From contig CBFFSA010000008.1 in assembly GCA_965644495.1 (NCBI GenBank), forward strand, positions 372,001-436,000: a stretch of 64,000 bases of DNA. The letters run 5' to 3'. Position numbers and translations under genes: made by a program. Below, piece after piece: positions 1,339 through 15,572 of the stretch (position 1 is the stretch's first letter; each line of letters starts with the position of its first letter). The notes beneath the pieces were generated by a model, which did not search any database, was not told the DNA's origin, and saw only the letters and a program-made list of their open reading frames with translations. The DNA comes from Perkinsela sp. CCAP 1560/9. Its lineage: Eukaryota; Protista; Euglenozoa: Kinetoplastea.

Positions 1339-1519
1339 GAAACAAATACTGTTCTCTTATTAAGCTTTTCTCCACTATTGTTCACCCTGGTTTGTTTGAA
1401 ACAAATATTATTCTCTTATTAAGCTTTTCTCCACTATTGTTCACCCTGGTTTGTTTGAAACAAATATTATTCTCTTATTAAGCTTTTCTCCACTATTGTT
1501 CACCCTGGTTTGTTCGAAA
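1339..1519. repeat. Tandem repeat, 3 x 59 bp
   Basis: Unit gaaacaaatattattctcttattaagcttttctccactattgttcaccctggtttgttt at 1339, 1398 and 1457; near-identical, no spacers. Confidence 0.95.
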
Positions 1520-3736: not shown

Positions 3737-4026
3737 TCGTAGACCCCCCCAGTAACAAGGATTTGACCCTTTTTCGGCGGTCCCCCAGTAACAAGGATTT
3801 GGCTCGGGAGGGTGGTTGGAGGGAGGTGTTTGGGCGGGTGGGGGTTGCTGGGCGGGTGAGAGTAGTTGCGCGGGAGCGAATGGCGTAGTTGCGGGGGTGG
3901 CTGGACAAAAAAGCAACGCATTCATGAACAAAAAGGGTCTTTTCCCACCCAAAAGGCATACCCCCCAATAACAAGGATTTGGTCATTTCGGCCCAAAATC
4001 GATTCTATTACTGGGGGGGTCTACGG
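3737..4026. mobile_element. MITE-like element, Tc1/mariner/pogo-type termini (family A)
   Basis: Perfect 18-bp inverted repeat cgtagacccccccagtaa (3738-3755) / ttactgggggggtctacg (4008-4025). TA at 4027-4028, CA at the left flank. Internal repeats cccca(g/a)taacaaggatttg at about 3747, 3783 and 3963. Confidence 0.75.
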
Positions 4027-4166: not shown

Positions 4167-6983
4167 TTACGACATGAAGACATCCACGTCTGACTTGGCA
4201 GTTGGCTCTGTGCCCCGAAGAAAAGCGTGTTCTAAAAGTTGCTCTACTGTCGCCCTCTTTTCTGAATCTCTTTCAAAGCACTTTAAAAGAAAATCTGCAA
4301 GCAAAGGGTCTAATTCTGTTGGTAAGTTTGGTGGTAAGCCGGATGTTTCAGTAATTTGCTGCATTGCTTGATACAGTGTTGCTGCCTGTCTCCATGGTGG
4401 TCGACCTCCATTGAGCATTTCCACAATTGTACACCCGAAGGACCATACGTCTGAATTGTACGTCCACTTGACTCCATGAAATGCTTCGGGCGCCATCCAA
4501 AGAGGGGTTCCCGTAATCGTCGCAGTTTCGGAACCAGTGACCAATTTTTTGGCCGTTCCAAAATCAGCAACTTTCAGAACGCCTGTTTTGGAAATCAGTA
4601 CATTGTCTCCTTTGAGATCACGATGTACAATCTGATGATTATGAAGGTGCTTTAACGCACTCAATATCTGGGTAGCGTAGCTTTGTAACGTTACTTTACT
4701 GAGGCCACCACTTGGAAGTTTTCGGCACATTTGGCTAAGGCTTCCTCCTTCAGCGTACTCCATCGCAATGGTAATGTCACGTGTGTTGCGATTCAGCTGA
4801 CAACCGTAATACTTGATCAAATTCCTATGTTCGGGAAGTTCCCTCATTAGGTTAACTTCTCTCACAATACTCTGTGCTTCCTTGAGAGAAAGTCGGTCAC
4901 GATGCTTCCCTTTTAGAGGAATGACTTTCAATGCGACAACGGTTCCTGTATCTTCTCTAAACGCTTTGAATACTTTACCGTGAGCCCCACGTCCGATGAG
5001 ATGCCCGCGGGTAAACTTCAATGTTGGGCTACTATCTGCGGATTTCGCGGCGATATCCATAAAAATATAATCCGTTGCTGAACGGGAAGTATTGTCAGAG
5101 AATGGTGAAGGACTTGGTGCTGATGACGGACTTCCTTGTGGTGACTCTGTGTCAAGATCTGATGAAAACGAGAATGATTCCTGTTGAGTTGGTGTTGAAG
5201 GACTTGAGAGTGCTCCGTTGTTCACAGTATATGCGCTTTCTTCCTCCGGCGCTGGTAGCAGAGATTGCAATGCTGGAGGTTTTTCGGATCTTACGGAACC
5301 CATTGAAGAAATAATGTCTTCTGAAGATGTAGTGAATGCCTCACACTGGCTTGATTTTTTCTTACGATAAAGCAATATACTCATTAATGCAGCGTTCAGA
5401 AGAAAACAGACGCTTATCCATACAAGAAAAATACGTTTGTAATGATGCCTGTGAAGGAAAGGGGCCAATTGTCTTGCCGTCGGAGGTAATTCTATGCTAA
5501 AAATAAGGACCGATTCCGAAGGCTGTAGTTCCGTACTGCTATGAGCAAATAATTTGTTGCGACCCTTTTTGCTTACAGTCACCGTTGGCTGCTCAAAGAC
5601 ATCTGAAGATTCCTTTGAAACGCAGTGTTTACCCCCCACAACAGCAATAGTATATTCATTCAGTCGGGCATTCGGTAGATTTCCAGAGTATACCGCGTGC
5701 ATGGAAGAGCCCGCAAGCTGAAAATTATTACTCTCCAGTGATCCAAGTAAAAGATTCAAGTTCACAACTCGCCAACCACAGCTACGACAACTGAGGTCCA
5801 AAACCTCTGCAAAAGGAACTATATTGCCGTCTTCGCCGAACCCACCAAAAACAAACAAGTAATTTTTGCCCTTTGTTCCGTCACCAACTACTATAACAGA
5901 ATGGTGACTCCTTGCGTAATGAAGCGGAGCGTATGGCTTCCATCCTAATTGCTCCTTAAAAAACCAAACTTTGTTCGTAACTGCACCGTTTGATATGAGT
6001 TGACCCCCAATCACAAACAAGATCCGTAAGGCATACAATGCGATTCGATGTCCACGTAAGCTCTCTGGCAAAAGAGCAACGACCTTTTTCTGATAAAATA
6101 TTGGCCAATGAACAGTATCGTACTCAACAATTTCCCTGGAACAGTTCACACTATCCAATACTTCCCCTGAGAAACCTTGTCTTGGTGATAACACTGCAGG
6201 TTCAATAATTTTGCTATGCTTGCGAATCCGTGAAGAATCTTTACTTGTACTTATATCCTGCTGCCTTGAGTGTCCGACAGAATGTTGAGCATTTATTTCT
6301 TTGCGTACATTATGTATCCTCACGCCGCCTCCGACCCAGATATAATCCCCAAGTTGAACAATCGTACTTTCACTCACTGGTGGAACGTTCGTTCCCCACG
6401 GCTCTCCATGCTCAGGAGGGGCATACCAATGAGGTTCTAACCACTGCTCAGTGGCCAAATCGAACACATCCGTATGTTCTGGAATATGGCCTCGTGGACC
6501 CACGCCACCTAACAATATGGCTACGTGATTGTGTATAACTGCACCAGAAGCATTCACTCTAGGAGTATGATACAACCCGGTATGATCCCCTGGGAGAGAA
6601 AACCACTTACGTTTCTCCATATCATATTTGAAATTTCTGGTGGCCCAAGTGCCATTCGAATACGTACCCCCGAAAACATAAAGACCAGATGCATACAGAA
6701 GAGTTACTGAGCCCAATCGTGGACCGTCAGGAAGAGTTTCGGTATGCGGCTTTCCGACAAGTGCGATTGAGATGTTCAATTCGGTTAAAGAACACGAAAT
6801 ATTTTTTCTGACCATAGAGTCCGCTGAGTAAACTCTATGCATATTTTCTTGGCGGAAAAACGGATCCAAGTAGGTACGACCCAAAGTCAAACCCAATAAG
6901 ACGCTCCCCACGAGAGGCAGTAATATTGTTTGAAGACAATACTGACGTTCTGACAGAGTGCTGCATACTCTATTAACCGACAT
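4167..6983 (-). CDS. Receptor-like Ser/Thr kinase: N-terminal hydrophobic segment, Kelch repeats, TM helix, STE11/MAP3K-type kinase
   Basis: Kelch GG blades (LYVFGG, ILLGG, IWVGGG, LFVIGG, LFVFGG, IAVVGG). TM IFLVWISVCFLLNAALMSILLY followed by RKKK. Kinase motifs GRGAHG, VALK, HRDLKGDN, DFG, GTPLWMAPE, DVWSFGC. Confidence 0.9.
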   Translation of the reverse strand: MSVNRVCSTLSERQYCLQTILLPLVGSVLLGLTLGRTYLDPFFRQENMHRVYSADSMVRKNISCSLTELNISIALVGKPHTETLPDGPRLGSVTLLYASGLYVFGGTYSNGTWATRNFKYDMEKRKWFSLPGDHTGLYHTPRVNASGAVIHNHVAILLGGVGPRGHIPEHTDVFDLATEQWLEPHWYAPPEHGEPWGTNVPPVSESTIVQLGDYIWVGGGVRIHNVRKEINAQHSVGHSRQQDISTSKDSSRIRKHSKIIEPAVLSPRQGFSGEVLDSVNCSREIVEYDTVHWPIFYQKKVVALLPESLRGHRIALYALRILFVIGGQLISNGAVTNKVWFFKEQLGWKPYAPLHYARSHHSVIVVGDGTKGKNYLFVFGGFGEDGNIVPFAEVLDLSCRSCGWRVVNLNLLLGSLESNNFQLAGSSMHAVYSGNLPNARLNEYTIAVVGGKHCVSKESSDVFEQPTVTVSKKGRNKLFAHSSTELQPSESVLIFSIELPPTARQLAPFLHRHHYKRIFLVWISVCFLLNAALMSILLYRKKKSSQCEAFTTSSEDIISSMGSVRSEKPPALQSLLPAPEEESAYTVNNGALSSPSTPTQQESFSFSSDLDTESPQGSPSSAPSPSPFSDNTSRSATDYIFMDIAAKSADSSPTLKFTRGHLIGRGAHGKVFKAFREDTGTVVALKVIPLKGKHRDRLSLKEAQSIVREVNLMRELPEHRNLIKYYGCQLNRNTRDITIAMEYAEGGSLSQMCRKLPSGGLSKVTLQSYATQILSALKHLHNHQIVHRDLKGDNVLISKTGVLKVADFGTAKKLVTGSETATITGTPLWMAPEAFHGVKWTYNSDVWSFGCTIVEMLNGGRPPWRQAATLYQAMQQITETSGLPPNLPTELDPLLADFLLKCFERDSEKRATVEQLLEHAFLRGTEPTAKSDVDVFMS

Positions 6984-7325
6984 TTATGTACATAGAGACT
7001 AAAATTGAAGAGATTTCTTTAATCGTGGACAGCAAAAGTCACGAATAAAAGCTTGTCGCAAAGGGCTTTTTACATGCAGGGGGTGCACGAAAATATTGAG
7101 GATAAAATTCGTAAATGTTGGCCAATTTTGGAAGGTAGCATCGCATTCGAGAGCTCTCATAGAGTTACATGTGATATTATTACCTATCGCGCATTCTTGG
7201 GATTGTTTCCTAATTTTTTCCAATTGTTGAACCTGAATTCTGGTTGCCACAAAGTGCCATACACCCCTGTTCCACTTTTTTGCCCGCAATTGATTGAGCA
7301 CACCAGATGAGCTTTTCGAATTTTC

Positions 7326-7434
7326 TTTTTTAGGCTCTTCGTTATACGCGGTGGTCGCTTTCAACTTAGAAGTCACTCATGCTGCGCGCTTCGCGTTGAA
7401 AACTACCACCGCGTATGACGAAGAGCCTAAAAAA
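7326..7434. repeat. ~40-bp inverted repeat hairpin (mini foldback element); diverged third copy at about 8160-8210
   Basis: ttttttaggctcttcgttatacgcggtggtcgctttcaac (7326-7365) pairs with gttgaaaactaccaccgcgtatgacgaagagcctaaaaaa (7395-7434), 37/40 matches. Confidence 0.8.
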
Positions 7435-7835
7435 AAAATTGGCTTCGAAAGCAGGAGAAACCGGAAGGATTGGAGCCAAAATTAGCCAATTTTAGGGTAG
7501 AAATAGGGTTATTTTTGCGTATTTTTGTTCTCAGAGCACTAAATTCGACTTTTTTTAAATCACTCGTACGCATGAATGTAAGGCTACAGAACGTAATCGG
7601 TATAGAATTCGAGTCCAACGACACCATTCTTCCGGGACAAAAATACCCCTTTGGGACCGAAAAATACTTTTTGGCATTTTTTAGTCAAATTTGGGCCATT
7701 TTGGTAGGCGCACCACGGCTCATAGAAGGGGTATCTCGTGAAACCAACTGCGGAGAAAGCTAGTATATGTCCCGAACTCTCAAAATACAATAGGGGAAAC
7801 AGTTTTAAAAAAGTATTTTTTTTGCCATTTTTTTC

Positions 7836-8520
7836 GCCAAGTTGAATTTTTTTTGCAAAAGAATTTGGGTAACCGGCACTATAAATGTAGGTTAAAATCC
7901 ATTTTTTTCTGATGATTTTTTTCCGCTCGAAAAAACTTTTACATGACTTTTTAAAACGTTTCCACTCATACTCATGTCGTTCCAACTTATATTTCAATGC
8001 TTGGAATACTCAATGGACCGCCCAGGATATACTACATTGGCCTACTACATTGGTCTACTTGGTATTGGTGACCTGTAAAAAGGATAAGGTGCGCTCCCAG
8101 ACGCTCCCAGACACTCCCATCCAGTTTGAACCCTCTTGGAAGCCACCACGGCTACCCCCTTCGCGTTGAGAACTGCTTCCGCGTTTAACGCAAAGACTAA
8201 AAAGGAAAAAATTGCGAAACGATCCAGAATAATCCAACTTTTGGTACAAATACTCGATTCTCCCCATATTTCGTATTCTCCCCATATTTCGGACGTTTTT
8301 TGGGGTCTTACCATTAGAGGTAGGGGGCACATCTGATCGAAAAAACGTGTGGTCTGGTAAGTAAGCTAAAAAAATAAATAAGAAAAGAGATTAACGAAAG
8401 ATCAAAAACTTTTTCCTGAGTCCTTTTGGGCATGATTGTTCAAACAAATTTTACTTGTTTTCAACCTACATTTATAGTGCCGGTGAACCAAAAATTTTTC
8501 CGAAAAAATCCGAACTTGTC
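7836..8520. mobile_element. Pair of inverted ~60-bp transposon-end-like sequences (piggyBac-like TTAA|CCT termini)
   Basis: accggcactataaatgtaggtt (7872-7893) is the exact reverse complement of aacctacatttatagtgccggt (8463-8484), and similarity extends over about 60 bp. Ends read agg|TTAA and TCAA|cct. Confidence 0.5.
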
Positions 8521-8848
8521 GGACCCGTCCTGCGCATACGTGGGGGGGTCACCCCCGGGTAGGGGGGTGGAAAATACGTACCAGGACCCTGGCTACCCGT
8601 TCTGCGCTTTTGTTTCGAAAAATAATTTTTTCAAAAAAAAATTCGTGCGGTATGCCCCCCATGGACCCCCAAGGGTCCGATTTTTTTTTGAAATTTTTTG
8701 GACCACCGGAGCCCCTTTTATATATTTTTCTTCTATTATATTACTGTGTTCCTCTTATATTTTCACTGTTTTTGTTCACTTTTTTTTCAATAATCGAGGG
8801 TAAAGCGGTAGTTATACAACCACCGCAATTTTTTCAGCAAAGTACGTA

Positions 8849-9205
8849 CTGTCCCCCCCGTACGTAAGAGTCCGCCGATTTTAGGCAATTGGACTCCTAA
8901 GTGGGGGGGTCACAATTTTTCGGACTCTTAAGTGGGAGGGGGCCGCATTTTTTCCTAAAATTTCAATATGGCCGGTTCCGTTTTTTTTTCCTCTATTTTT
9001 TCTATTTTTGTACCATCAAGTACAAATCGCTTGGAAATATTAAAAACGCAATGGGCAGACAAAAAACAAAATCAAAGAAAATAGAAAAAAATCAAAGAAA
9101 AAAAAATCTGGCGGCGCTTCGCGCCGCAGGCAGCCCGAGGTTCCGTCAAAAAGGACTCTTAAGTAGGGGGAGTACCCCGCGGACTCTTAAGTAGGGGGGG
9201 GGCAG
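8849..9205. mobile_element. MITE, Tc1/mariner/pogo-type with TA target-site duplication (family B)
   Basis: TA|ctgtcccccccgtacgtaagagtccgc versus gcggactcttaagtagggggggggcag|TA, 26/29 inverted match. Internal ggactc(c/t)taagt repeats near 8891, 8923, 9153 and 9181. Hairpin gcggcgc-ttc-gcgccgc at 9111-9127. Confidence 0.85.
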
Positions 9206-9397
9206 TAAAAGATTCGCGAGATCGTGTAAAAAATGAGTTTTTCACCCCTTGTTTCAGCTGTGGTAGCTAAGCAAAAAAGGTTCGTTTTTTCCACGTTTTT
9301 CAGTAACAAATTGTGTTTTTTTGTGTTTTTTTAGGTTATTTTACCAGAATTTATGTATACTTCTATCTTCCATTTCTCTTTTGAAATGTCCTGATTA

Positions 9398-10066
9398 CTG
9401 TTACCCCCCCTTACTTAGCCCCCACTTTTTGGCCCAAAACCCATACTTTGTGGTGAAGTAAGGGGGGTGAATAAGCGACTCAAGGTTCGATCAATTTATA
9501 GTTCTCTCGGAAATCCTCAAATTATTGAAGTACACTATGCTATCGACATTGAGCATAATTCCCTTTTCTTGAGTGTGCAAGCCAGACTCTTCACAGCTAG
9601 ATTTGGAAGATTCGAGGCCGACGTCCTCTACCTGTTTTCGTTAGTACAAGACGGCATCAACGTGCTGCTACTAACCCGTTGTGTCGACGAATCGTACGGT
9701 GAACCCATGACAATCTTCAAAAGTCATCATTCCTGCAGCTACGTAGCCTTCCTGTAGCCGTTAACGTTCCCCCCGGAACGTTAAACCGGACTGTGGTTTA
9801 AAATCCCGGTATGACGGCGTCGTCACCAAGAAAGTTGCACCACAAACCTTTGTGCATCGATCTTTGTGTGCCATCTGTGTCCCCCCTTGAAGACCACTGG
9901 GCGTGGCTCTGCCTCGCCTTACAACGATGCAACGGTCGGTTGCAGTGCACCCCTCCGGCTGTGTAAAGAGGTGGTAAGTTGCCTGGAGAAAAATCTGACA
10001 CCCCCCCTTACTTCACCACACGTCCAGTGACTAACTGTGGTGAAGTAAGGGGGGAGGCGAAGTAAG
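9398..10066. mobile_element. Degenerate Tc1/mariner/pogo-type element (family C), right end truncated
   Basis: Left end TA|ctgttacccccccttactt. Motif tgtggtgaagtaagggggg at 9449 and 10036, and inverted at 10001-10020. A minus-strand interior frame reads RRGALQPTVASL*GEAEPRPVVFKGG, weakly like a pogo DDE_1 segment. Confidence 0.6.
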
Positions 10067-10187
10067 TAAGGTTCAAATTTACTTCAGTCTAACCGTTCAC
10101 GCATACCCAACGCTTGGCAGTGTCCTCGTGACACCCAAACGCCTTGGCGTCTGCAGGAAAAGAATCCGTTTCCTTAATCATAGTCTA

Positions 10188-10219
10188 ACTAGTATTTTAG
10201 TACGTACTAAAATACTAGT
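10188..10219. repeat. Perfect 32-bp palindrome
   Basis: actagtattttagtac|gtactaaaatactagt; a second palindrome atagtacgtactat lies at 10238-10251. Confidence 0.95.
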
Positions 10220-10836
10220 AATCGACTAGTACGTAATATAGTACGTACTATGAGATACTACTTTTTTGGAATGGAAGGATTTTTTTTCTCAGGTATTGCG
10301 GCACTCCTATTTGACAAAACAAATCGTTACTTTTGATCGAAACAGACGAGACAACCTATTTTGCATGGGCATAGTACAGTATAGAGGACTTTTGCGAGTA
10401 TTTTCACGGTCGACGCTCGGAGCTCTGCTTTTAGAGAGGGATGGGGATAACTTAAAGAGGAAAAACTGCTGCTTGAGAACTGCTGATGAGGGATTATAAC
10501 TGCTGATGATGAGGAACCATCGGAAAAATAATTAAGTTAATTATTTTTTACCAAAAGTATCCTACGAGAGGATCTCAGTTGCCCATGAGGTGCATAAATT
10601 AATCTAATTCGTTTCTGCACCTTTCGTTGTCAGAAAAAGCCCTCTTCTGGGGCATAGTGCTGTAGTAATGTCGAGCTAAATTCAGTCACTAAATTCACAA
10701 AAATAATCAGTTTTTTCTAAAACCCACAAATGTTTGCGTGTTAAAAAATCAAGTTCTTTTTCGAATTTTTGATACTTCCCTCAAAAGGGGCTGTGGGTAC
10801 TGTTTTTTCCCAAAAAATATTTTTCTTGTCATTTCC

Positions 10837-11938
10837 AGTGCACCACTTTTCTTAAAAACTGTATTCTCATATCCAATGCACCATCAATTATTTAAAGAAG
10901 TATTATTTTATAATATCCTTCGGATCTACACTACAAATCCGCCATTATTCAAGACTTAGTCTTTACGATCGTAATCGTATTCATGCACTCTTCGCATCTG
11001 GCGAGAGTCGGCGAAGCATAGCTCGCATAATTGGCAAAAGTCACAGCACTGTTTGTCGCGAGTTGGCGCGTAATGCAAGAAGGGGTCAGTGCTATGAGGG
11101 GATGAGGGCACATACGCCTCTTGTGTAAAAGGGTAAAGCCTCACAAGATACAAGACCTTTTGCAAGAGGAAGTCAGCTCTCGACTTCAAAAGAAGCACAG
11201 CCCGAAACAGATTGCAAATACGATCCGGAGCTGTCGTACCGCCTCGACTTCTACCATATATCGCCACATTCGTCGCAACGCGTCCTTGGGCGGCAAGTTG
11301 TACACCCATTTGCGGATCCGGCGAAAGAGGCCATACCGTCGTCGCGCTAGACCTGATCGCAGCGCGATTCCCAACCGAACGCCACTTGAAAATCGACCAG
11401 AAGTAGTCAATAAGCGTCGGCGCTACGGCGATTGGGAAGCAGACTTGGTCGACGGCCGAGGACATACCGGATATATTCTTACCCTGTGCGAGCGTAAGAG
11501 TCGCATCCTTGTTCTTCTCAAGTTGGAATCTAAGAACGCGAAGGAGGTAAGCAAACAAATTGTAGACGGGTTAAAGAACACAGGGTTCGGACGATCACAT
11601 ACGACAACGGAACAGAATTCTGACACCATGAAGAAGTAAACAAAGAATTATAATGCAAGTCTTTCTTTTGCGCTCCGTACTATTCGTGGGAGAAAGGGTC
11701 TGTGGAACATGCAAACGATTTGATCCGACAATTCCATCAGAAAACCGAATTTTTTGAGTATTTGAACCAAAGTGAATTAAACAAAACAGCATTGGAATTG
11801 AGCACTCGTCCTCGGAAATTATTAAAATATCGTTCTCCAATGGATTTTGTGAATGAACTCCTCTACATATGTGCATAAGGCCATAGTTCGTAAATCTTTC
11901 ATGGACTAGTGGTCCAGTTTTTAAAAAAGTGTAGCACT
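10837..11938 (+). mobile_element. IS30-family insertion sequence (~1.1 kb), degenerate
   Basis: Inverted repeats agtgcaccacttttcttaaaaactg (10837-10861) and cagtttttaaaaaagtgtagcact (11915-11938), 22/25 matches, flanking an IS30 transposase relic. Confidence 0.85.
10937..11878 (+). pseudogene. IS30-family DDE transposase pseudogene
   Basis: Three joined frames. HTH: HYSRLSLYDRNRIHALFASGESRRSIARIIGKSHSTVCRELARN. Middle: SPKQIA...STIYR...RPEVVNKRRRYGDWEADLV...LTLCERKSR. C-terminal: TITYDNGTEF*...CAPYYSWEKGSVEHANDLIRQF...RPRKLLKYRSP. Two frameshifts (about 11120 and 11580), two in-frame stops, and ATC where the start is expected. Confidence 0.92.
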
Positions 11939-11939
11939 T

Positions 11940-14900
11940 CTACAGATCATACACTGTGCAATCTAAGGTTGCGCTGTACTCCTGTACATCGCTTAGACTA
12001 GAGGAGGTAGGAGTGTGCACAATATGATTGCTGCTGTGTGTTATACTGTCTTGACTGTTTGTGTGAATTTTCGAAGCACTTCCACTGCCTCGCTCAAACT
12101 TTTTGTGACGTGTATGCTCTACAATTGAAGGTAGATTTGTTGACCTCTGTGGACTCCCAGATTCGGGGCGTATTTGAGTTACTGTCAAATCTTGAAAAAT
12201 GTTATATTTTTCAAGATGAGATGATTCTATCCTTTCTGACTTCGTTATGAAGGGATCCATTAAGAGATCATCGACGTCTGGGCGTCGCTCCGGATCACGT
12301 TCGAAACATTTCAAGAGGAAGTTATTCAAAATTGGGGGTAGTGATTTCGAACTAATCGTGGGCGGCAATCCAGTGCTCTGCGTTACCATTGTAATAAAGT
12401 TTGAGAGCGAGTCCGTCGAAGGCCATGGTGCCTCGCCGCTGTTCAACATTTCTACCACTGTGCATCCAACAGACCATACATCGACTTTCGCACTAAGATA
12501 ATCGTTCTTGTTAACGTCTTTTACATAATCTTGTTGCGTAGATTTTGTTGTGAAGTCATTAGTCGGAGTCAATCCCGCGTTCTCAACGACAGCTTTAAAT
12601 TCGGTCTGGTGAGAATATTCCACCATAGATGGATTTTTAGCCTTCAACTCGGAACAAGGCAATAGGTCTTTACCCTTCCACTGCACAAGGAGCTCGGGAG
12701 CAGTCCAAGGCAACGTACCGAAAGCATGCTTTGCAAAAGGATTCGTTGTGTGCTTTTCGTTATATGAACATAGCTGATTGTCCACGGTATGTGTTGCGAA
12801 AATCCTGGCATGGCCAAAATCGGCTAGTTTCAGGGTTCCTCTCGAGCTTAATAGTATATTATCCGCCTTGACATCGCAGTGTGACACCTGGTGCGCATGA
12901 AGGTGGGAAAGTCCCATCAACAGTTGCGTGGTAAATTTCTGTATGACACTAATGTCTAACTGTTGACGTCGGCATAGAGCGCCAAGTGTACCGCCTTCTG
13001 CGAATTCCATAACAATGTGTATCTCTGCTTTTTCGGGAAATATATTACAACCGTAGTATTGTACAATGTTTGGATGAGGTGGAAGCGATTTCATTAATTT
13101 TGTTTCTCTAGCAATTATTGCGATGTCTTCTTGCTGCATTGAATCGTATATAGGCAAGACTTTCATCGCCAAAAGCCCTCCACCGCGTTGGACTGCGGCA
13201 TAAACAATCCCATATGACCCTTGTCCAATTTCAGATGTCAATTTATACTGTAAAGTTGCTCGGTCAGACGTTGGGGTAAGAGGTGAATTTAGATCACCCA
13301 CGTGTTTTTCAAGCTGTTCTGTGAGCGATGCACTCGTATGACATGCAAACGTATCGCTATCGGCTTCGGGCCACGAGGGGCCGAAATTTGGCTCCAAATC
13401 ATGCCCCTCAAAGTTTAAATGAAGTAATGGGCGACGTACCTCCTCTTTTTTAACCTTTTCGGGTCCATTCTTTGTCATATAATGTATACGCAGACTTCTA
13501 TAGATTTCCAGGAAAACAAGACATAGCAATATGCAAATTATGAGACTTGTCCAAAAACGTGCACTTTCGACCAATGCGATCAAACGAAAGCTTTTCGATA
13601 GCCCTTGTGAGCTTATGTGCGTGATATTCGCCCGAAAAATAAGCAACTCTGATATGTACTCCGCCGGGCGGTATCCTCCACTGTATGCAAAATCAAATCT
13701 GCTATAGTTCCCAAAGTCTGTGACGAATGGTACCGTAACTGACGACCATGCTGCCATAAACAATCTTTGGAGTCGATTCCTTGTCTCATACACAGGAAAT
13801 AACTTCGCATTGTGCCTGTTTTTTCGCAAGCAGACAAGATCTATAAATCTCTGAGCTGACATTCTCTGCCATTGAGAAGTTGGTACGCGTAGGTCAAATG
13901 TCTCGATTCCTTCCGCTAGTTTGGGCCGCTCTATTTTCGCATCTTGAATGCCTCCTGCGACGAGAAGAAATTCAATTATTGTTCTCGGAGTTCCTAGTTT
14001 TACTGCTGTGAAGTAAGCTCGTGGTGAATGCATTGAATGCAAAGATACCCAATGCAGCAATGATTTATCGGCTGACAGAGTAGACGTACTTGTTTGCAAT
14101 GTCCTCCTCTGAACCTGAGCTCCGCGACCCACTCCCCCAATCGACAACAACGAGCAATTTGATCCACGAAGTAGTTGATGACCCGTAATTGGCAGTATGC
14201 TTCTTCTTCCGGCTGTTGTCCCGAAAACTCTTTCTTCAGAAAATGTGTCCAAATTAAACGAAAAGTACTTTTCGTCCACTATATTTCGATTATGATCTCC
14301 TCCTATTATGTACAACACCGACGAATTTCCTTTCTCGCTGCATTCCGGTGGAAGGATCACAGTCCCAGGAAAGCTTGGTGCCTTGAATGTACTGCCTCCT
14401 AGACTTCGCATTTTCCAGGAAACCGCAGCTAACCAGCGTAAACTTGGAATATGAAATACATCCACCACATGAACAGCAGGCTCTGAACCATCTCTAGGAT
14501 CGTACGAATGTCCACCTATTATAATAATAATATCGTCTTCGTATTCCTTTCCCAAGCTTCTAACAACGTTATTTCGAGAAGAATTGGTTGAATCTACTTT
14601 ACGTTTGAGTTCGGCTCTGCCATACACTCGGGGGGTGTAATATTGGCTTTCTTTCCTTAGAACTGTCCATTTCTTTGACGTTGTATTATATTGCAACGAT
14701 CGTGAGGAAGGTGCCTTGCTGCCTTGAGATCCTTCTCTTCCACCGAAAATAAACACGGAATCTCTATAATAAACGCTGGAATGTCCGTACCGTGGTCTAG
14801 GTAACGTAGTATATTCGAGAACTCCAATATCCAGTACTGAGCGTTCGGTAAAAAAAGCATTAGCGCACGTTTTATTATTCAATATTTGATTCAGATGGAT

Positions 14901-15080
14901 GCAACGTTTGTTGTCATACGCTATGTGATTTTCTTCAGTATTTAAGAAATTTTTGGTCGTGATATTCGTTGGCATGGTCTCGTTCGAAAACAGAAGCGTG
15001 CGTAATCCTTGATTGAAGGGGTGAAAAAAGGAACAATATAGCAAGACAATTACGGCGCGAAAATGCACGAAGAATGTCAT
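11940..15080 (-). CDS. Receptor-like kinase paralog: signal-like N-terminus, Kelch repeats, TM helix, non-RD STE-type kinase
   Basis: PRYGHSSVYYRDSVFIFGG, IIIIGG, LYIIGG, LLSIGG, LLVAGG. TM FWTSLIICILLCLVFLEIY. Kinase motifs GQGSYG, LAMK, HCDVKADN, DFG, GTLPWTAPE, long insert, DVWSVGC. Confidence 0.9.
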   Translation of the reverse strand: MTFFVHFRAVIVLLYCSFFHPFNQGLRTLLFSNETMPTNITTKNFLNTEENHIAYDNKRCIHLNQILNNKTCANAFFTERSVLDIGVLEYTTLPRPRYGHSSVYYRDSVFIFGGREGSQGSKAPSSRSLQYNTTSKKWTVLRKESQYYTPRVYGRAELKRKVDSTNSSRNNVVRSLGKEYEDDIIIIIGGHSYDPRDGSEPAVHVVDVFHIPSLRWLAAVSWKMRSLGGSTFKAPSFPGTVILPPECSEKGNSSVLYIIGGDHNRNIVDEKYFSFNLDTFSEERVFGTTAGRRSILPITGHQLLRGSNCSLLSIGGVGRGAQVQRRTLQTSTSTLSADKSLLHWVSLHSMHSPRAYFTAVKLGTPRTIIEFLLVAGGIQDAKIERPKLAEGIETFDLRVPTSQWQRMSAQRFIDLVCLRKNRHNAKLFPVYETRNRLQRLFMAAWSSVTVPFVTDFGNYSRFDFAYSGGYRPAEYISELLIFRANITHISSQGLSKSFRLIALVESARFWTSLIICILLCLVFLEIYRSLRIHYMTKNGPEKVKKEEVRRPLLHLNFEGHDLEPNFGPSWPEADSDTFACHTSASLTEQLEKHVGDLNSPLTPTSDRATLQYKLTSEIGQGSYGIVYAAVQRGGGLLAMKVLPIYDSMQQEDIAIIARETKLMKSLPPHPNIVQYYGCNIFPEKAEIHIVMEFAEGGTLGALCRRQQLDISVIQKFTTQLLMGLSHLHAHQVSHCDVKADNILLSSRGTLKLADFGHARIFATHTVDNQLCSYNEKHTTNPFAKHAFGTLPWTAPELLVQWKGKDLLPCSELKAKNPSMVEYSHQTEFKAVVENAGLTPTNDFTTKSTQQDYVKDVNKNDYLSAKVDVWSVGCTVVEMLNSGEAPWPSTDSLSNFITMVTQSTGLPPTISSKSLPPILNNFLLKCFERDPERRPDVDDLLMDPFITKSERIESSHLEKYNIFQDLTVTQIRPESGSPQRSTNLPSIVEHTRHKKFERGSGSASKIHTNSQDSITHSSNHIVHTPTSSSLSDVQEYSATLDCTVYDL

Positions 15081-15572
15081 AAGCTAGATATTCATTCACC
15101 AATGTTTCGTTAAAATTCAGGCGTTTGTTTGGGATAGCTGCTTCGAATCTTAACCCCTCTTAGAAAACGATATCTAAAGAATGCACACGAATTCAATTAA
15201 TAAGCAGTGCTGGCCACTCTTCAAATAGCCTCCGAACTGTGTAGCGGAATGTATCATGAACTAAGTTCTAATTCGAAAGGTGTTTTTTACTCCGAGTTTT
15301 TACCTATTAGGAAGAATTTCATACGATCCTTATCACGACAGATAAAAAGAACCTAATAAACTAGCTGAAGTTACATTAATTAATCAGTTTTCATGTACTG
15401 GTAAATTTGTTGCTCTTCGGGCTGACCTGCGTCAGTAAATGAGTAACCCAAATTGGTCACCCAAAAAAAGATTTCCTCAGTGAGAGAGATTTGATCCTTT
15501 AGCCTCAACCCGATTCTCTTACTGGGTGGTGTACGGTAATATGCCATATTGAGTAGAGACAAGACAAGGCTT

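What the first reader, a model, noticed from the sequence alone, without database searches (positions are those of the whole stretch)
4167..15080. Paralogous pair of Kelch-ectodomain, transmembrane MAP3K-type receptor-like kinases
Seen: both genes (4167-6983 and 11940-15080) have an N-terminal hydrophobic segment, five to six Kelch GG blades, one internal TM helix followed by basic residues, a Ser-rich linker and an STE11/MEKK-like kinase. The Kelch regions carry many NxS/T sequons (NIS, NGT, NAS, NCS; NET, NIT, NKT, NTT, NSS, NYS). Known: Kelch propellers are usually cytosolic, MAP3Ks are usually soluble, and kinetoplastids lack receptor tyrosine kinases, though some TM-bearing STE kinases exist. 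Inference: a direct ligand-sensing receptor/MAP3K fusion, possibly an undescribed signalling family for sensing environment or host.
Basis: partly seen in the sequence, partly recalled or inferred. Interest (0 to 1): 0.8.

Follow-up and report, generated by a model that had tools for sequence, protein, structure and literature searches.

The report
Kelch-ectodomain membrane MAP3K-like kinase pair
Two neighbouring genes of a Perkinsela-related kinetoplastid encode single-pass membrane kinases with a Kelch-repeat outer domain and a MAP3K-type inner kinase, a real and conserved but only moderately new variant of membrane kinases already catalogued in trypanosomes.

Summary
Two intact minus-strand ORFs, P1 (4167-6983, 938 aa) and P2 (11940-15080, 1046 aa), each have an N-terminal hydrophobic signal-like segment, a Kelch-repeat region with six hydrophobic-strand+GG motifs, one internal TM helix and a C-terminal kinase. 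The closest solved relatives of both kinases are MAP3K2 and MAP3K5.

P1 has all catalytic motifs. P2 is non-RD (HCD), with a 70-aa insert and a long activation loop. No other protein in this 21-Mb genome combines Kelch and kinase.

The family is not unique to this organism. Perkinsela KNH00558.1 ("protein kinase") and two unnamed ENA assembly proteins share the architecture, and in the kinase tree they group with P1 and P2 (support 99/89).

The receptor reading is only partly supported. Kelch and kinase must lie on opposite sides of a membrane, but which membrane, and any ligand, are unknown. AlphaFold models were poor (pLDDT about 41-42).

Kinetoplastid kinome papers already list a signal-peptide + Kelch + TM kinase, T. 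brucei Tb927.5.3150, which localised to the ER, and a TM-bearing STE11 kinase, MEKK1. I could not test homology to Tb927.5.3150.

The scan noted this pair before: in other readings of this window, and once on "another piece" of this genome. My genome search finds one locus.

Verdict: new variant of a known kind, moderate interest.

The parts
4167..6983 (-). P1, 938-aa Kelch-TM-kinase gene, the conserved copy (orthologue of Perkinsela KNH00558.1)
   Evidence: ORF. Pfam Kelch + Pkinase. Groups with the Perkinsela-type proteins at 96/88. Kinase 45-47% identical to them.
6882..6938 (-). P1 N-terminal hydrophobic segment (aa 16-34), a signal peptide or signal anchor
   Evidence: Kyte-Doolittle 19-aa window 1.98. 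Orthologues also begin with short hydrophobic N-termini.
5754..6731 (-). P1 Kelch-repeat region (aa 85-410), blades 1-5. A sixth GG motif lies at aa 450.
   Evidence: Pfam. Family blade HMM. GG motifs at aa 105, 159, 218, 326, 380, 450. Profile against PDB: LZTR1 Kelch 1e-17. Foldseek of the weak model hits six-bladed Kelch, TM-score by target about 0.6.
5370..5426 (-). P1 transmembrane helix (aa 520-538), followed by YRKKK
   Evidence: Hydropathy 2.37. Flanking charges.
5013..5369 (-). P1 Ser/Pro-rich juxtamembrane linker (aa 539-657)
   Evidence: 24% Ser and 10% Pro, against 10% and 5.5% in the whole protein.
4218..5012 (-). P1 kinase domain (aa 658-922), STE11/MAP3K-like, RD type, all catalytic motifs present
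   Evidence: Pkinase 8.8e-63. Gly-loop, VALK, HRDLKGDN, DFG, APE, DVWSFG. PDB best hit MAP3K2 4.1e-48.
11940..15080 (-). P2, 1046-aa divergent paralogue
   Evidence: ORF. Same clade as P1 at 99/89, with a long branch of 0.87. Ectodomain 23% identical to P1 in a collinear alignment.
15024..15080 (-). P2 N-terminal signal-like hydrophobic segment (aa 1-19)
   Evidence: Hydropathy 1.81.
13851..14804 (-). P2 Kelch-repeat region (aa 93-410). A further GG motif lies at aa 468.
   Evidence: Pfam Kelch_6/4/3 on blade 1. Blades 2, 4 and 5, and weakly 3, by the family blade HMM. GG motifs.
13500..13556 (-). P2 transmembrane helix (aa 509-527)
   Evidence: Hydropathy 2.35.
12246..13247 (-). P2 kinase domain (aa 612-945): non-RD (HCD), catalytic Lys/Asp/DFG/APE kept, 43-aa DFG-to-APE segment
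   Evidence: Pfam Pkinase in two stretches. Motifs. PDB best hit MAP3K2 4.4e-31.
12483..12692 (-). P2 insert of about 70 aa between kinase subdomains VIII and IX (aa 797-866)
   Evidence: Gap in the P1/P2 BLAST alignment. APE at aa 794, DVWSVG at aa 867.
6984..11939 (.). 5-kb spacer between the two genes with no long ORF. It holds an IS30-like transposase relic at 11121-11639 (+).
   Evidence: ORF list. NCBIfam transpos_IS30 1.3e-34, profile positions 34-195 of 267.

Best explanation
P1 and P2 are two paralogous single-pass (type I) membrane Ser/Thr kinases of one family.

Architecture:
- A signal-like N-terminus directs insertion into the ER membrane.
- A Kelch-repeat domain of about 470 aa, probably a six-bladed beta-propeller, faces the lumenal or extracellular side.
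- One TM helix follows.
- An STE11/MAP3K-class kinase faces the cytosol.

Roles of the two copies:
- P1 is the conserved, catalytically canonical copy, orthologous to a Perkinsela protein.
- P2 is a fast-evolving non-RD copy with an insert and an extended activation loop.

Most likely mechanism (inferred, not shown): a partner or ligand binds the propeller face and changes the oligomeric state of the receptor. This activates the cytosolic MAP3K-like domain, which phosphorylates downstream kinases. P2 may act as a differently regulated partner of P1.

Shown: gene integrity, domain order, membership of the kinase in the STE11-like group, family conservation, and opposite-side topology as a consequence of a single TM.

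Inferred: signal-peptide function, propeller closure, the membrane where the proteins reside (surface or ER/endosome), ligand sensing, the MAPK cascade output, and any P1-P2 partnership.
For: - Intact ORFs at the given coordinates.
- Kelch + Pkinase in both.
- One strong internal hydrophobic helix plus an N-terminal hydrophobic segment in both, and also in the Perkinsela-type homologues P0085, P0125 and P0128.
- The five ectodomains align collinearly, with 27 invariant columns that include Kelch-type GG, W and R positions.
- A profile of that alignment hits solved Kelch propellers: LZTR1 1e-17, KLHL20, KLHDC2.
- Six strand+GG motifs per ectodomain.
- The Foldseek matches listed for the P1 model are Kelch-repeat beta-propellers (designed SAKe6 proteins, KEAP1, KLHL and KLHDC2 domains); the best are six-bladed, with TM-score by target 0.60-0.63.
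- Language-model neighbours are all Kelch propellers.
- Sequons are enriched in the P2 ectodomain and absent from its cytosolic half.
- Kinase tree: P1, P2 and the three Perkinsela-type proteins form a clade at 99/89 inside a MAP3K-like assemblage.
- The best solved relatives of both kinases are MAP3K2, then MAP3K5.
- P1 has all catalytic motifs. P2 keeps Lys, Asp, DFG and APE.
- Only these two genes in the genome combine Kelch and kinase.
Against: - AlphaFold models of both ectodomains are of low confidence (mean pLDDT 42.1 and 40.6), so propeller closure is not demonstrated.
- Only four blades per protein are supported by HMMs.
- Signal peptide and topology rest on hydropathy only. No SignalP or DeepTMHMM was available.
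- Basic residues flank the TM on both sides in P1 and P2.
- Sequon asymmetry is not significant for P1.
- The only experimentally studied kinetoplastid Kelch-TM kinase was seen in the ER, not at the surface.
- Perkinsela, an intracellular symbiont, keeps the gene, which does not favour sensing of an outside environment.
Confidence: 0.55

Rival explanations
1. The proteins are endomembrane (ER or endosome) residents whose Kelch domain sits in the lumen. They would act as an organelle-to-cytosol sensor or scaffold, in the manner of IRE1/PERK-type lumenal sensors, rather than as a cell-surface receptor for environmental or host ligands.
For: - The T. brucei kinase with the same domain order (Tb927.5.3150) colocalised with BiP, with extra puncta near the endosomal region (PMC8519429).
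- Five of the seven tagged T. brucei TM kinases were in the ER.
- The family is kept in the reduced genome of the intracellular symbiont Perkinsela.
Against: - The T. brucei localisation used over-expressed, C-terminally tagged protein, and the authors say ER signal does not exclude a later destination.
- Homology of Tb927.5.3150 to P1/P2 was not tested here.
- No ER-retention motif was looked for or seen.
Confidence: 0.3
2. P2 is a decaying or regulatory pseudo-receptor. It arose as a recent tandem duplicate of P1 that lost normal regulation (non-RD, insert, long branch) and has no independent sensing role.
For: - Long branch of 0.87 against 0.38 for P1.
- HCD instead of HRD, a 70-aa insert and a 43-aa DFG-to-APE segment.
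- Only one Kelch blade reaches Pfam significance.
- P1+P2 as sisters is not rejected (AU p = 0.32).
- The Perkinsela-type loci carry a single copy, with no P2-like neighbour.
- Transposon relics lie between the genes.
Against: - The 1046-aa frame is fully open.
- The catalytic Lys, Asp, DFG and APE are kept.
- Sequons are significantly concentrated in the ectodomain, as expected for a protein still made and glycosylated.
- The best tree places P2 outside P1 plus the Perkinsela proteins at 96/88, which fits an older duplication.
Confidence: 0.2
3. The Kelch region is cytosolic, like most Kelch propellers, and the hydrophobic segments are not a signal plus a TM. The protein would then be a soluble or peripherally attached MAP3K with a Kelch protein-interaction domain.
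For: - Most Kelch propellers are cytosolic (general knowledge).
- A soluble Kelch+PB1+kinase protein exists among the nearest kinases (P0133, no hydrophobic segment).
- Basic residues lie on both sides of the TM in P1 and P2.
Against: - The internal segment scores 2.35-2.37 over 19 residues in both proteins. It is conserved in position in all five family members, just before the kinase.
- N-terminal hydrophobic segments are also conserved.
- P2 shows sequon asymmetry.
- P0133 lies in a different kinase clade.
Confidence: 0.07

Closest known systems
Perkinsela sp. CCAP 1560/4 protein KNH00558.1 ('protein kinase', 912 aa), with unnamed ENA assembly proteins P0078/P0125 and P0128
   Same: - Short hydrophobic N-terminus, Kelch repeats, a TM followed by basic residues, and a C-terminal STE11-like kinase.
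- Kinase 45-47% identical to P1.
- Collinear ectodomain similarity.
- Same tree clade.
   Different: - A single copy at its locus, with no P2-like neighbour.
- Different flanking genes.
- Longer inserts in blade 5 and in the kinase.
- The two ENA proteins have a second, weaker hydrophobic segment in the ectodomain.
- Never described functionally, as far as the paper library shows.
Trypanosoma brucei Tb927.5.3150 (Kelch-bearing transmembrane kinase; Jensen et al. 2021, PMC8519429)
   Same: - Signal peptide, Kelch domains in the N-terminal 440 aa or so, TM domain(s), then a kinase.
- A kinetoplastid protein.
- By gene numbering it also has a neighbouring kinase gene, Tb927.5.3160.
   Different: - 178 kDa (about 1650 aa).
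- Two predicted TMDs after the signal peptide (442-464 and 607-629).
- Kinase classed as orphan/unique, not STE.
- Seen in the ER.
- No trypanosomatid protein was retrieved by the exhaustive ectodomain search at E <= 0.001 or appeared as a Kelch-bearing hit in the kinase word search.
- Sequence homology could not be tested directly.
Trypanosoma brucei MEKK1 (Tb927.2.2720), a membrane-bound STE11-like kinase of the quorum-sensing pathway
   Same: A STE11/MAP3K-like kinase domain tethered to a membrane in a kinetoplastid, proposed to act early in a signalling pathway.
   Different: - A hairpin of two TMDs, so both ends are predicted on the same side.
- No Kelch ectodomain.
[quoted passage not shown]
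- Its relation to the P1/P2 clade was not tested.
Receptor-like kinases with Kelch-repeat ectodomains in green algae (PMC12757656), and extracellular Kelch proteins such as attractin and galactose oxidase
   Same: - Kelch repeats outside the cytosol, joined to a TM and a kinase: 4 of 36 chlorophyte RLKs.
- The Pfam Attractin/LZTR1 beta-propeller model matches P1 and P2.
   Different: - Plant and algal RLKs carry Pelle/TKL-type kinases, not STE11 (general knowledge).
- No sequence relationship beyond the generic Kelch repeat.
Non-RD receptor kinases of plant innate immunity (for example the XA21 and FLS2 class; from general knowledge)
   Same: P2 lacks the Arg before the catalytic Asp (HCD), as do many pattern-recognition receptor kinases.
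   Different: A different kinase group. This is a resemblance only and nothing was tested.

Membership tests
STE11 / MAP3K-like protein kinases (STE group) | The kinase domain is most similar to MAP3Ks and clusters with them | tested here: met
   The best solved relatives of both P1 and P2 are MAP3K2, then MAP3K5, ahead of the STE20 kinases. In the tree the clade sits among plant MAP3Ks, ASK, yeast MAP3Ks and kinetoplastid MORN-kinases, with only moderate deep support of 80-86.
STE11 / MAP3K-like protein kinases (STE group) | Complete catalytic apparatus (Gly-loop, beta3 Lys, HRD Asp, DFG, APE) | tested here: met
   P1 has every motif. P2 has every motif except that HRD reads HCD, making it non-RD.
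STE11 / MAP3K-like protein kinases (STE group) | Phosphorylates a MAP2K (STE7) in a three-tier cascade | not testable with these tools
   Needs biochemistry or genetics.
Kelch-repeat beta-propeller | Significant matches to Kelch repeat models | tested here: met
   P1: Kelch_4 40.7 bits (cut-off 21.6), and KLHDC2/KLHL20 domain 63.5 bits (cut-off 50). P2: Kelch_6 30.4, Kelch_4 30.2 and Kelch_3 30.3 bits, all above their cut-offs. The family profile hits LZTR1 Kelch at 1e-17.
Kelch-repeat beta-propeller | Five to seven blades that close into a ring | tested here: inconclusive
   There are six strand+GG motifs per protein, but only four blades are supported by HMMs. The AlphaFold models have pLDDT 42 and 41. 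The P1 model still superposes on whole six-bladed Kelch domains, with TM-score by target about 0.6.
Type I receptor-like protein kinase | A cleavable signal peptide or N-terminal anchor, plus one TM helix between ectodomain and kinase | tested here: inconclusive
   Hydropathy finds exactly these two segments in P1 and P2, and equivalents in the homologues. No dedicated predictor was available, and the translation start is not mapped.
Type I receptor-like protein kinase | The ectodomain is exposed to the secretory pathway (N-glycosylation sites) | tested here: inconclusive
   P2: 9 sequons in the ectodomain against 4.2 expected (p about 0.014), and 0 in the cytosolic part against 3.8 expected (p about 0.016). 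P1 and the homologues are not significant.
Type I receptor-like protein kinase | Cell-surface location and ligand-dependent activation | not testable with these tools
   Needs localisation and ligand experiments.
Tb927.5.3150-type Kelch transmembrane kinase of trypanosomatids | Signal peptide + Kelch + TMD + kinase domain order | tested here: met
   The order is the same, by comparison with the published description.
Tb927.5.3150-type Kelch transmembrane kinase of trypanosomatids | Sequence orthology (ectodomain and kinase) | tested here: inconclusive
   The T. brucei sequence could not be fetched. The exhaustive ectodomain search returned no trypanosomatid protein at E <= 0.001. The kinase word search returned trypanosomatid MORN-kinases but no Kelch kinase. 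Published class is orphan/unique, against STE11-like here.
Perkinsela KNH00558.1-type Kelch-TM-STE11 kinases | Shared full-length architecture and monophyly of the kinase domains | tested here: met
   Clade at 99/89, with P1 inside it at 96/88. Collinear ectodomain alignment. Same hydrophobic segments.

The most novel reading that the evidence does not exclude
The pair belongs to a lineage-restricted family (Prokinetoplastina, or ancestral to kinetoplastids and lost or diverged beyond recognition in trypanosomatids) of true receptor MAP3Ks. In this reading a glycosylated Kelch propeller at the cell surface binds an external or host-derived ligand and feeds directly into a MAPK cascade with no intermediate adaptor. 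The canonical P1 and the non-RD P2 would work as a heteromeric receptor.
Probability: 0.2. Interest if true: 0.65.

Novelty: new variant of a known kind. Interest (0 to 1): 0.42.

Why it matters
Kinetoplastids lack receptor tyrosine kinases and have very few membrane kinases. How they sense their surroundings, including hosts, is still largely open.

This family has one ectodomain, one TM helix and one MAP3K-type kinase. That is a simpler topology than the multi-pass T. brucei membrane kinases, so it would be an easier system for testing whether any kinetoplastid kinase acts as a true receptor.

The family is kept in the reduced genome of the amoeba symbiont Perkinsela, which suggests a core function.

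The gain is incremental. Kelch-bearing TM kinases and TM-bearing STE11 kinases are already catalogued in trypanosomes, and nothing here shows ligand binding or surface exposure.

Tried and rejected
1. Word-index protein searches found no full-length relative. I ran one with whole P1 and one with its ectodomain. The first drew its words only from the first 500 residues, so its hits were unrelated kinases.
2. The exhaustive HMMER search of the P1 ectodomain gave only generic Kelch hits, plus two proteins of the same architecture.
3. AlphaFold on a five-sequence alignment gave poor models for both ectodomains. I therefore treat the Foldseek result as suggestive only.
There is no expression or trans-splice-site evidence, and read laying was not used.
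5. The metagenome scan was empty. The ectodomain alignment had no stretch conserved enough to search with. The full-length alignment gave 157 pattern matches, none confirmed.
6. I looked for a P2-like neighbour beside the Perkinsela-type genes. The flanking 570-aa and roughly 1500-aa genes have no Pfam domain, and the 570-aa one shows no similarity to P2.
7. The Leishmaniinae kinases nearest in the tree (Lotmaria, Porcisia; about 1500 aa) have neither Kelch nor a hydrophobic segment. They are not orthologues in architecture.
8. P0058 (kinase + TM + C-terminal Kelch) has the opposite domain order and matched only weakly (E 2.5e-7, 18% of the query), so I rejected it as a relative.
9. P0133 (Kelch + PB1 + kinase, no TM) falls in another kinase clade.
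10. Recent tandem duplication against an old duplication is unresolved. The best tree puts P2 outside, but the AU test does not reject P1+P2 as sisters (p = 0.32).
11. Homology to Tb927.5.3150 could not be tested.

Full report
**What is there.** The window is a minus-strand gene array at about 43% G+C. It is contig C8:372001-436000 of a 21-Mb, 110-contig assembly. Each begins at the first codon of its maximal open frame (open frames 938 and 1047 aa), so no upstream extension is possible.

Pfam finds Kelch families in the N-terminal half and Pkinase in the C-terminal part of both proteins.
- P1: Pkinase 8.8e-63, Kelch_4 40.7 bits, KLHDC2/KLHL20 Kelch domain 63.5 bits.
- P2: Pkinase 1.6e-49 split into two stretches; Kelch_6, Kelch_4 and Kelch_3 about 30 bits.

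**Membrane segments and topology.** A Kyte-Doolittle scan finds two strong hydrophobic segments in each protein.
- One lies at the N-terminus: P1 aa 16-34, P2 aa 1-19.
- The other lies between the Kelch region and the kinase: P1 aa 520-538 followed by YRKKK, and P2 aa 509-527 followed by RSLR.
- A weaker peak at P1 aa 314-332 is a Kelch strand that precedes a GG motif, not a TM.

With one internal TM, the Kelch region and the kinase must lie on opposite sides of a membrane. Because a kinase needs cytosolic ATP, the Kelch region is lumenal or extracellular. This is inference from hydropathy, since no dedicated topology predictor was available. Basic residues occur on both sides of the TM in P1 and P2.

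Sequons give modest support. In P2 all nine lie in the ectodomain (9 against 4.2 expected by shuffling, p about 0.014), and none lie in the 519-aa cytosolic part (3.8 expected, p about 0.016). In P1 the 5:1 split is not significant.

The Ser-rich linker is real for P1 (24% Ser) but not for P2, whose C-terminal tail is the Ser-rich part.

**The Kelch region.** Each ectodomain holds six hydrophobic-strand+GG motifs, at P1 aa 105, 159, 218, 326, 380 and 450, and at P2 aa 113, 189, 260, 315, 376 and 468. Support for individual blades is uneven.
- Scanned one at a time, P1 blades 1, 2, 4 and 5 match Kelch models, while blades 3 and 6 do not.
- The later P2 blades do not match on their own.
- A blade HMM built from the family recovers four blades in every member, and a weak fifth in P2.
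- A profile of the five aligned ectodomains hits solved Kelch propellers: LZTR1 1e-17, then KLHL20, KLHDC2 and others.
- The ESM Atlas feature neighbours are all Kelch propellers, at scores below 0.9, so these are leads only.

AlphaFold2 on the five-sequence alignments gave poor models, with mean pLDDT 42.1 and 40.6. Even so, the Foldseek matches listed for the P1 model are Kelch-repeat beta-propellers. The best are six-bladed, at TM-score by target 0.60-0.63 over about 330 columns. I read this as "probably a six-bladed propeller, not demonstrated".

**The kinases.**
- P1 has the Gly-loop, VALK, HRDLKGDN, DFG, GTPLWMAPE and DVWSFG.
- P2 keeps the Gly-loop, the beta3 Lys (LAMK), the catalytic Asp, DFG and APE, but reads HCD, so it is non-RD.
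- P2 also has a 43-aa DFG-to-APE segment and an insert of about 70 aa between APE (aa 794) and DVWSVG (aa 867).
- The best solved relatives of both are MAP3K2 (4.1e-48 and 4.4e-31), then MAP3K5/ASK1, ahead of the STE20 kinases.

This confirms the STE11/MAP3K-like class.

**Paralogy and relatives.** P1 and P2 are 35-44% identical in the kinase and 23% in a collinear ectodomain alignment. In their own genome neither ectodomain has another copy. The other Kelch genes are not kinases, and the nearest kinase paralogues carry MORN repeats or no known domain.

The exhaustive HMMER search of the P1 ectodomain against 1.84 billion representatives gave 50 hits at E <= 0.001. Nearly all were generic single-blade matches. 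Two of them, P0078 and P0085, have the same Kelch-then-kinase order. P0085 is Perkinsela sp. CCAP 1560/4 KNH00558.1, named only "protein kinase". A kinase-region search added P0128. All three, and the longer P0125, have a short hydrophobic N-terminus and a TM followed by basic residues just before the kinase.

A careful maximum-likelihood tree was built from 49 kinase domains: own-genome paralogues, these homologues and named MAP3Ks.
- P1, P2 and the three Perkinsela-type proteins form one clade at 99/89.
- P1 joins the Perkinsela-type proteins at 96/88, and P2 lies outside on a long branch.
- An AU test does not reject P1+P2 as sisters (p = 0.32), so the age of the duplication is open.
- In Perkinsela and the two ENA assemblies the gene is single at its locus, and its neighbours are not P2-like.

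I did not identify the species.

**What is already known.** The 2005 TriTryp kinome paper lists Kelch as an accessory domain of one "unique" kinase, and ten T. brucei kinases with TM domains, several of them STE (PMC1266030).

Jensen et al. 2021 describe Tb927.5.3150 as follows (PMC8519429):
- 178 kDa, with a signal peptide at aa 1-22, Kelch domains, and TMDs at 442-464 and 607-629;
- conserved in T. cruzi;
- colocalising with the ER marker BiP, with extra puncta near the endosomal region.

The kinome-wide RNAi study classes Tb927.5.3150 as an orphan kinase with no loss-of-fitness phenotype. It also lists a neighbouring orphan kinase, Tb927.5.3160 (PMC3894213). T. brucei MEKK1 is a TM-bearing STE11-like kinase of the quorum-sensing pathway. 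Kelch-repeat ectodomains occur in 4 of 36 chlorophyte receptor-like kinases (PMC12757656). No paper in the library mentions Perkinsela together with Kelch. A cross-kingdom survey of protist TM kinases does not mention kinetoplastids or propellers.

So the two ingredients, and even the domain order, have precedents in kinetoplastids. I found no description of the single-pass Kelch + STE11 version conserved in the Perkinsela lineage. No trypanosomatid Kelch kinase surfaced, and the published kinase class differs.

**Mechanism.** Most likely these are type I membrane kinases whose Kelch propeller binds a partner or ligand on the non-cytosolic side and thereby controls a cytosolic MAP3K-like domain. 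P1 is the conserved, canonical enzyme. P2 is a divergent non-RD paralogue that may be regulated differently or act together with P1.

The main rival concerns place rather than architecture: an ER or endosomal lumenal sensor rather than a surface receptor. It is favoured by the T. brucei localisation and by retention of the family in an intracellular symbiont. A cytosolic Kelch domain is unlikely, given the conserved internal TM.

**Verdict.** This is a new variant of a known kind, of moderate interest.

Noticed in passing
window 11121-11639 (+), about 300 bp from the P2 stop codon: An ORF of 172 aa matches the bacterial IS30-family transposase model (NF033563, E 1.3e-34, 120 bits against a cut-off of 80). 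It covers only profile positions 34-195 of 267, so it is a truncated relic inside a eukaryotic chromosome. Other first-stage notes flag the same element.
   Followed up: partly
window 6984-11939: The two kinase genes are separated by about 5 kb with no ORF over 200 aa apart from the overlapping pair at the IS30 relic, which is unusual in this otherwise dense gene array. The spacer contains inverted repeats (7322-7365 / 7395-7438 at 91%; 7835-7897 / 8459-8521 at 79%).
   Followed up: partly
window 1339-1519: Three tandem copies, 59 nt start to start (the 63-nt units as reported overlap by 4 nt), 95-100% identical, lie in the 2.8-kb stretch with no long ORF downstream of P1.
   Followed up: no
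proteins P0136, P0137, P0140 (EukProt transcriptomes): One of the three groups nearest the Kelch-TM-kinase clade consists of MAP3K-like kinases with a TM helix close to the N-terminus and almost no ectodomain. Membrane-tethered STE11-like kinases may therefore be more widespread in related protists.
   Followed up: partly
proteins P0078 aa 383-401 and P0125 aa 409-427: The two ENA homologues have a second, weaker hydrophobic segment between the Kelch blades and the main TM. This recalls the two TMDs reported for Tb927.5.3150. P1 and P2 have a GG-blade motif at the aligned place instead.
   Followed up: no
literature: T. brucei chromosome 5: Tb927.5.3150 (the Kelch TM kinase) and Tb927.5.3160 are both listed as orphan kinases and have consecutive gene numbers, so T. 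brucei may also have a tandem kinase pair at this locus. Whether this mirrors the P2-P1 pair is untested.
   Followed up: no
window 3745-3988 and 15473-15500: A short motif of 28 nt recurs three times downstream of P1 and once upstream of P2, at 71-86% identity. It may be a chance match or an intergenic processing signal.
   Followed up: no
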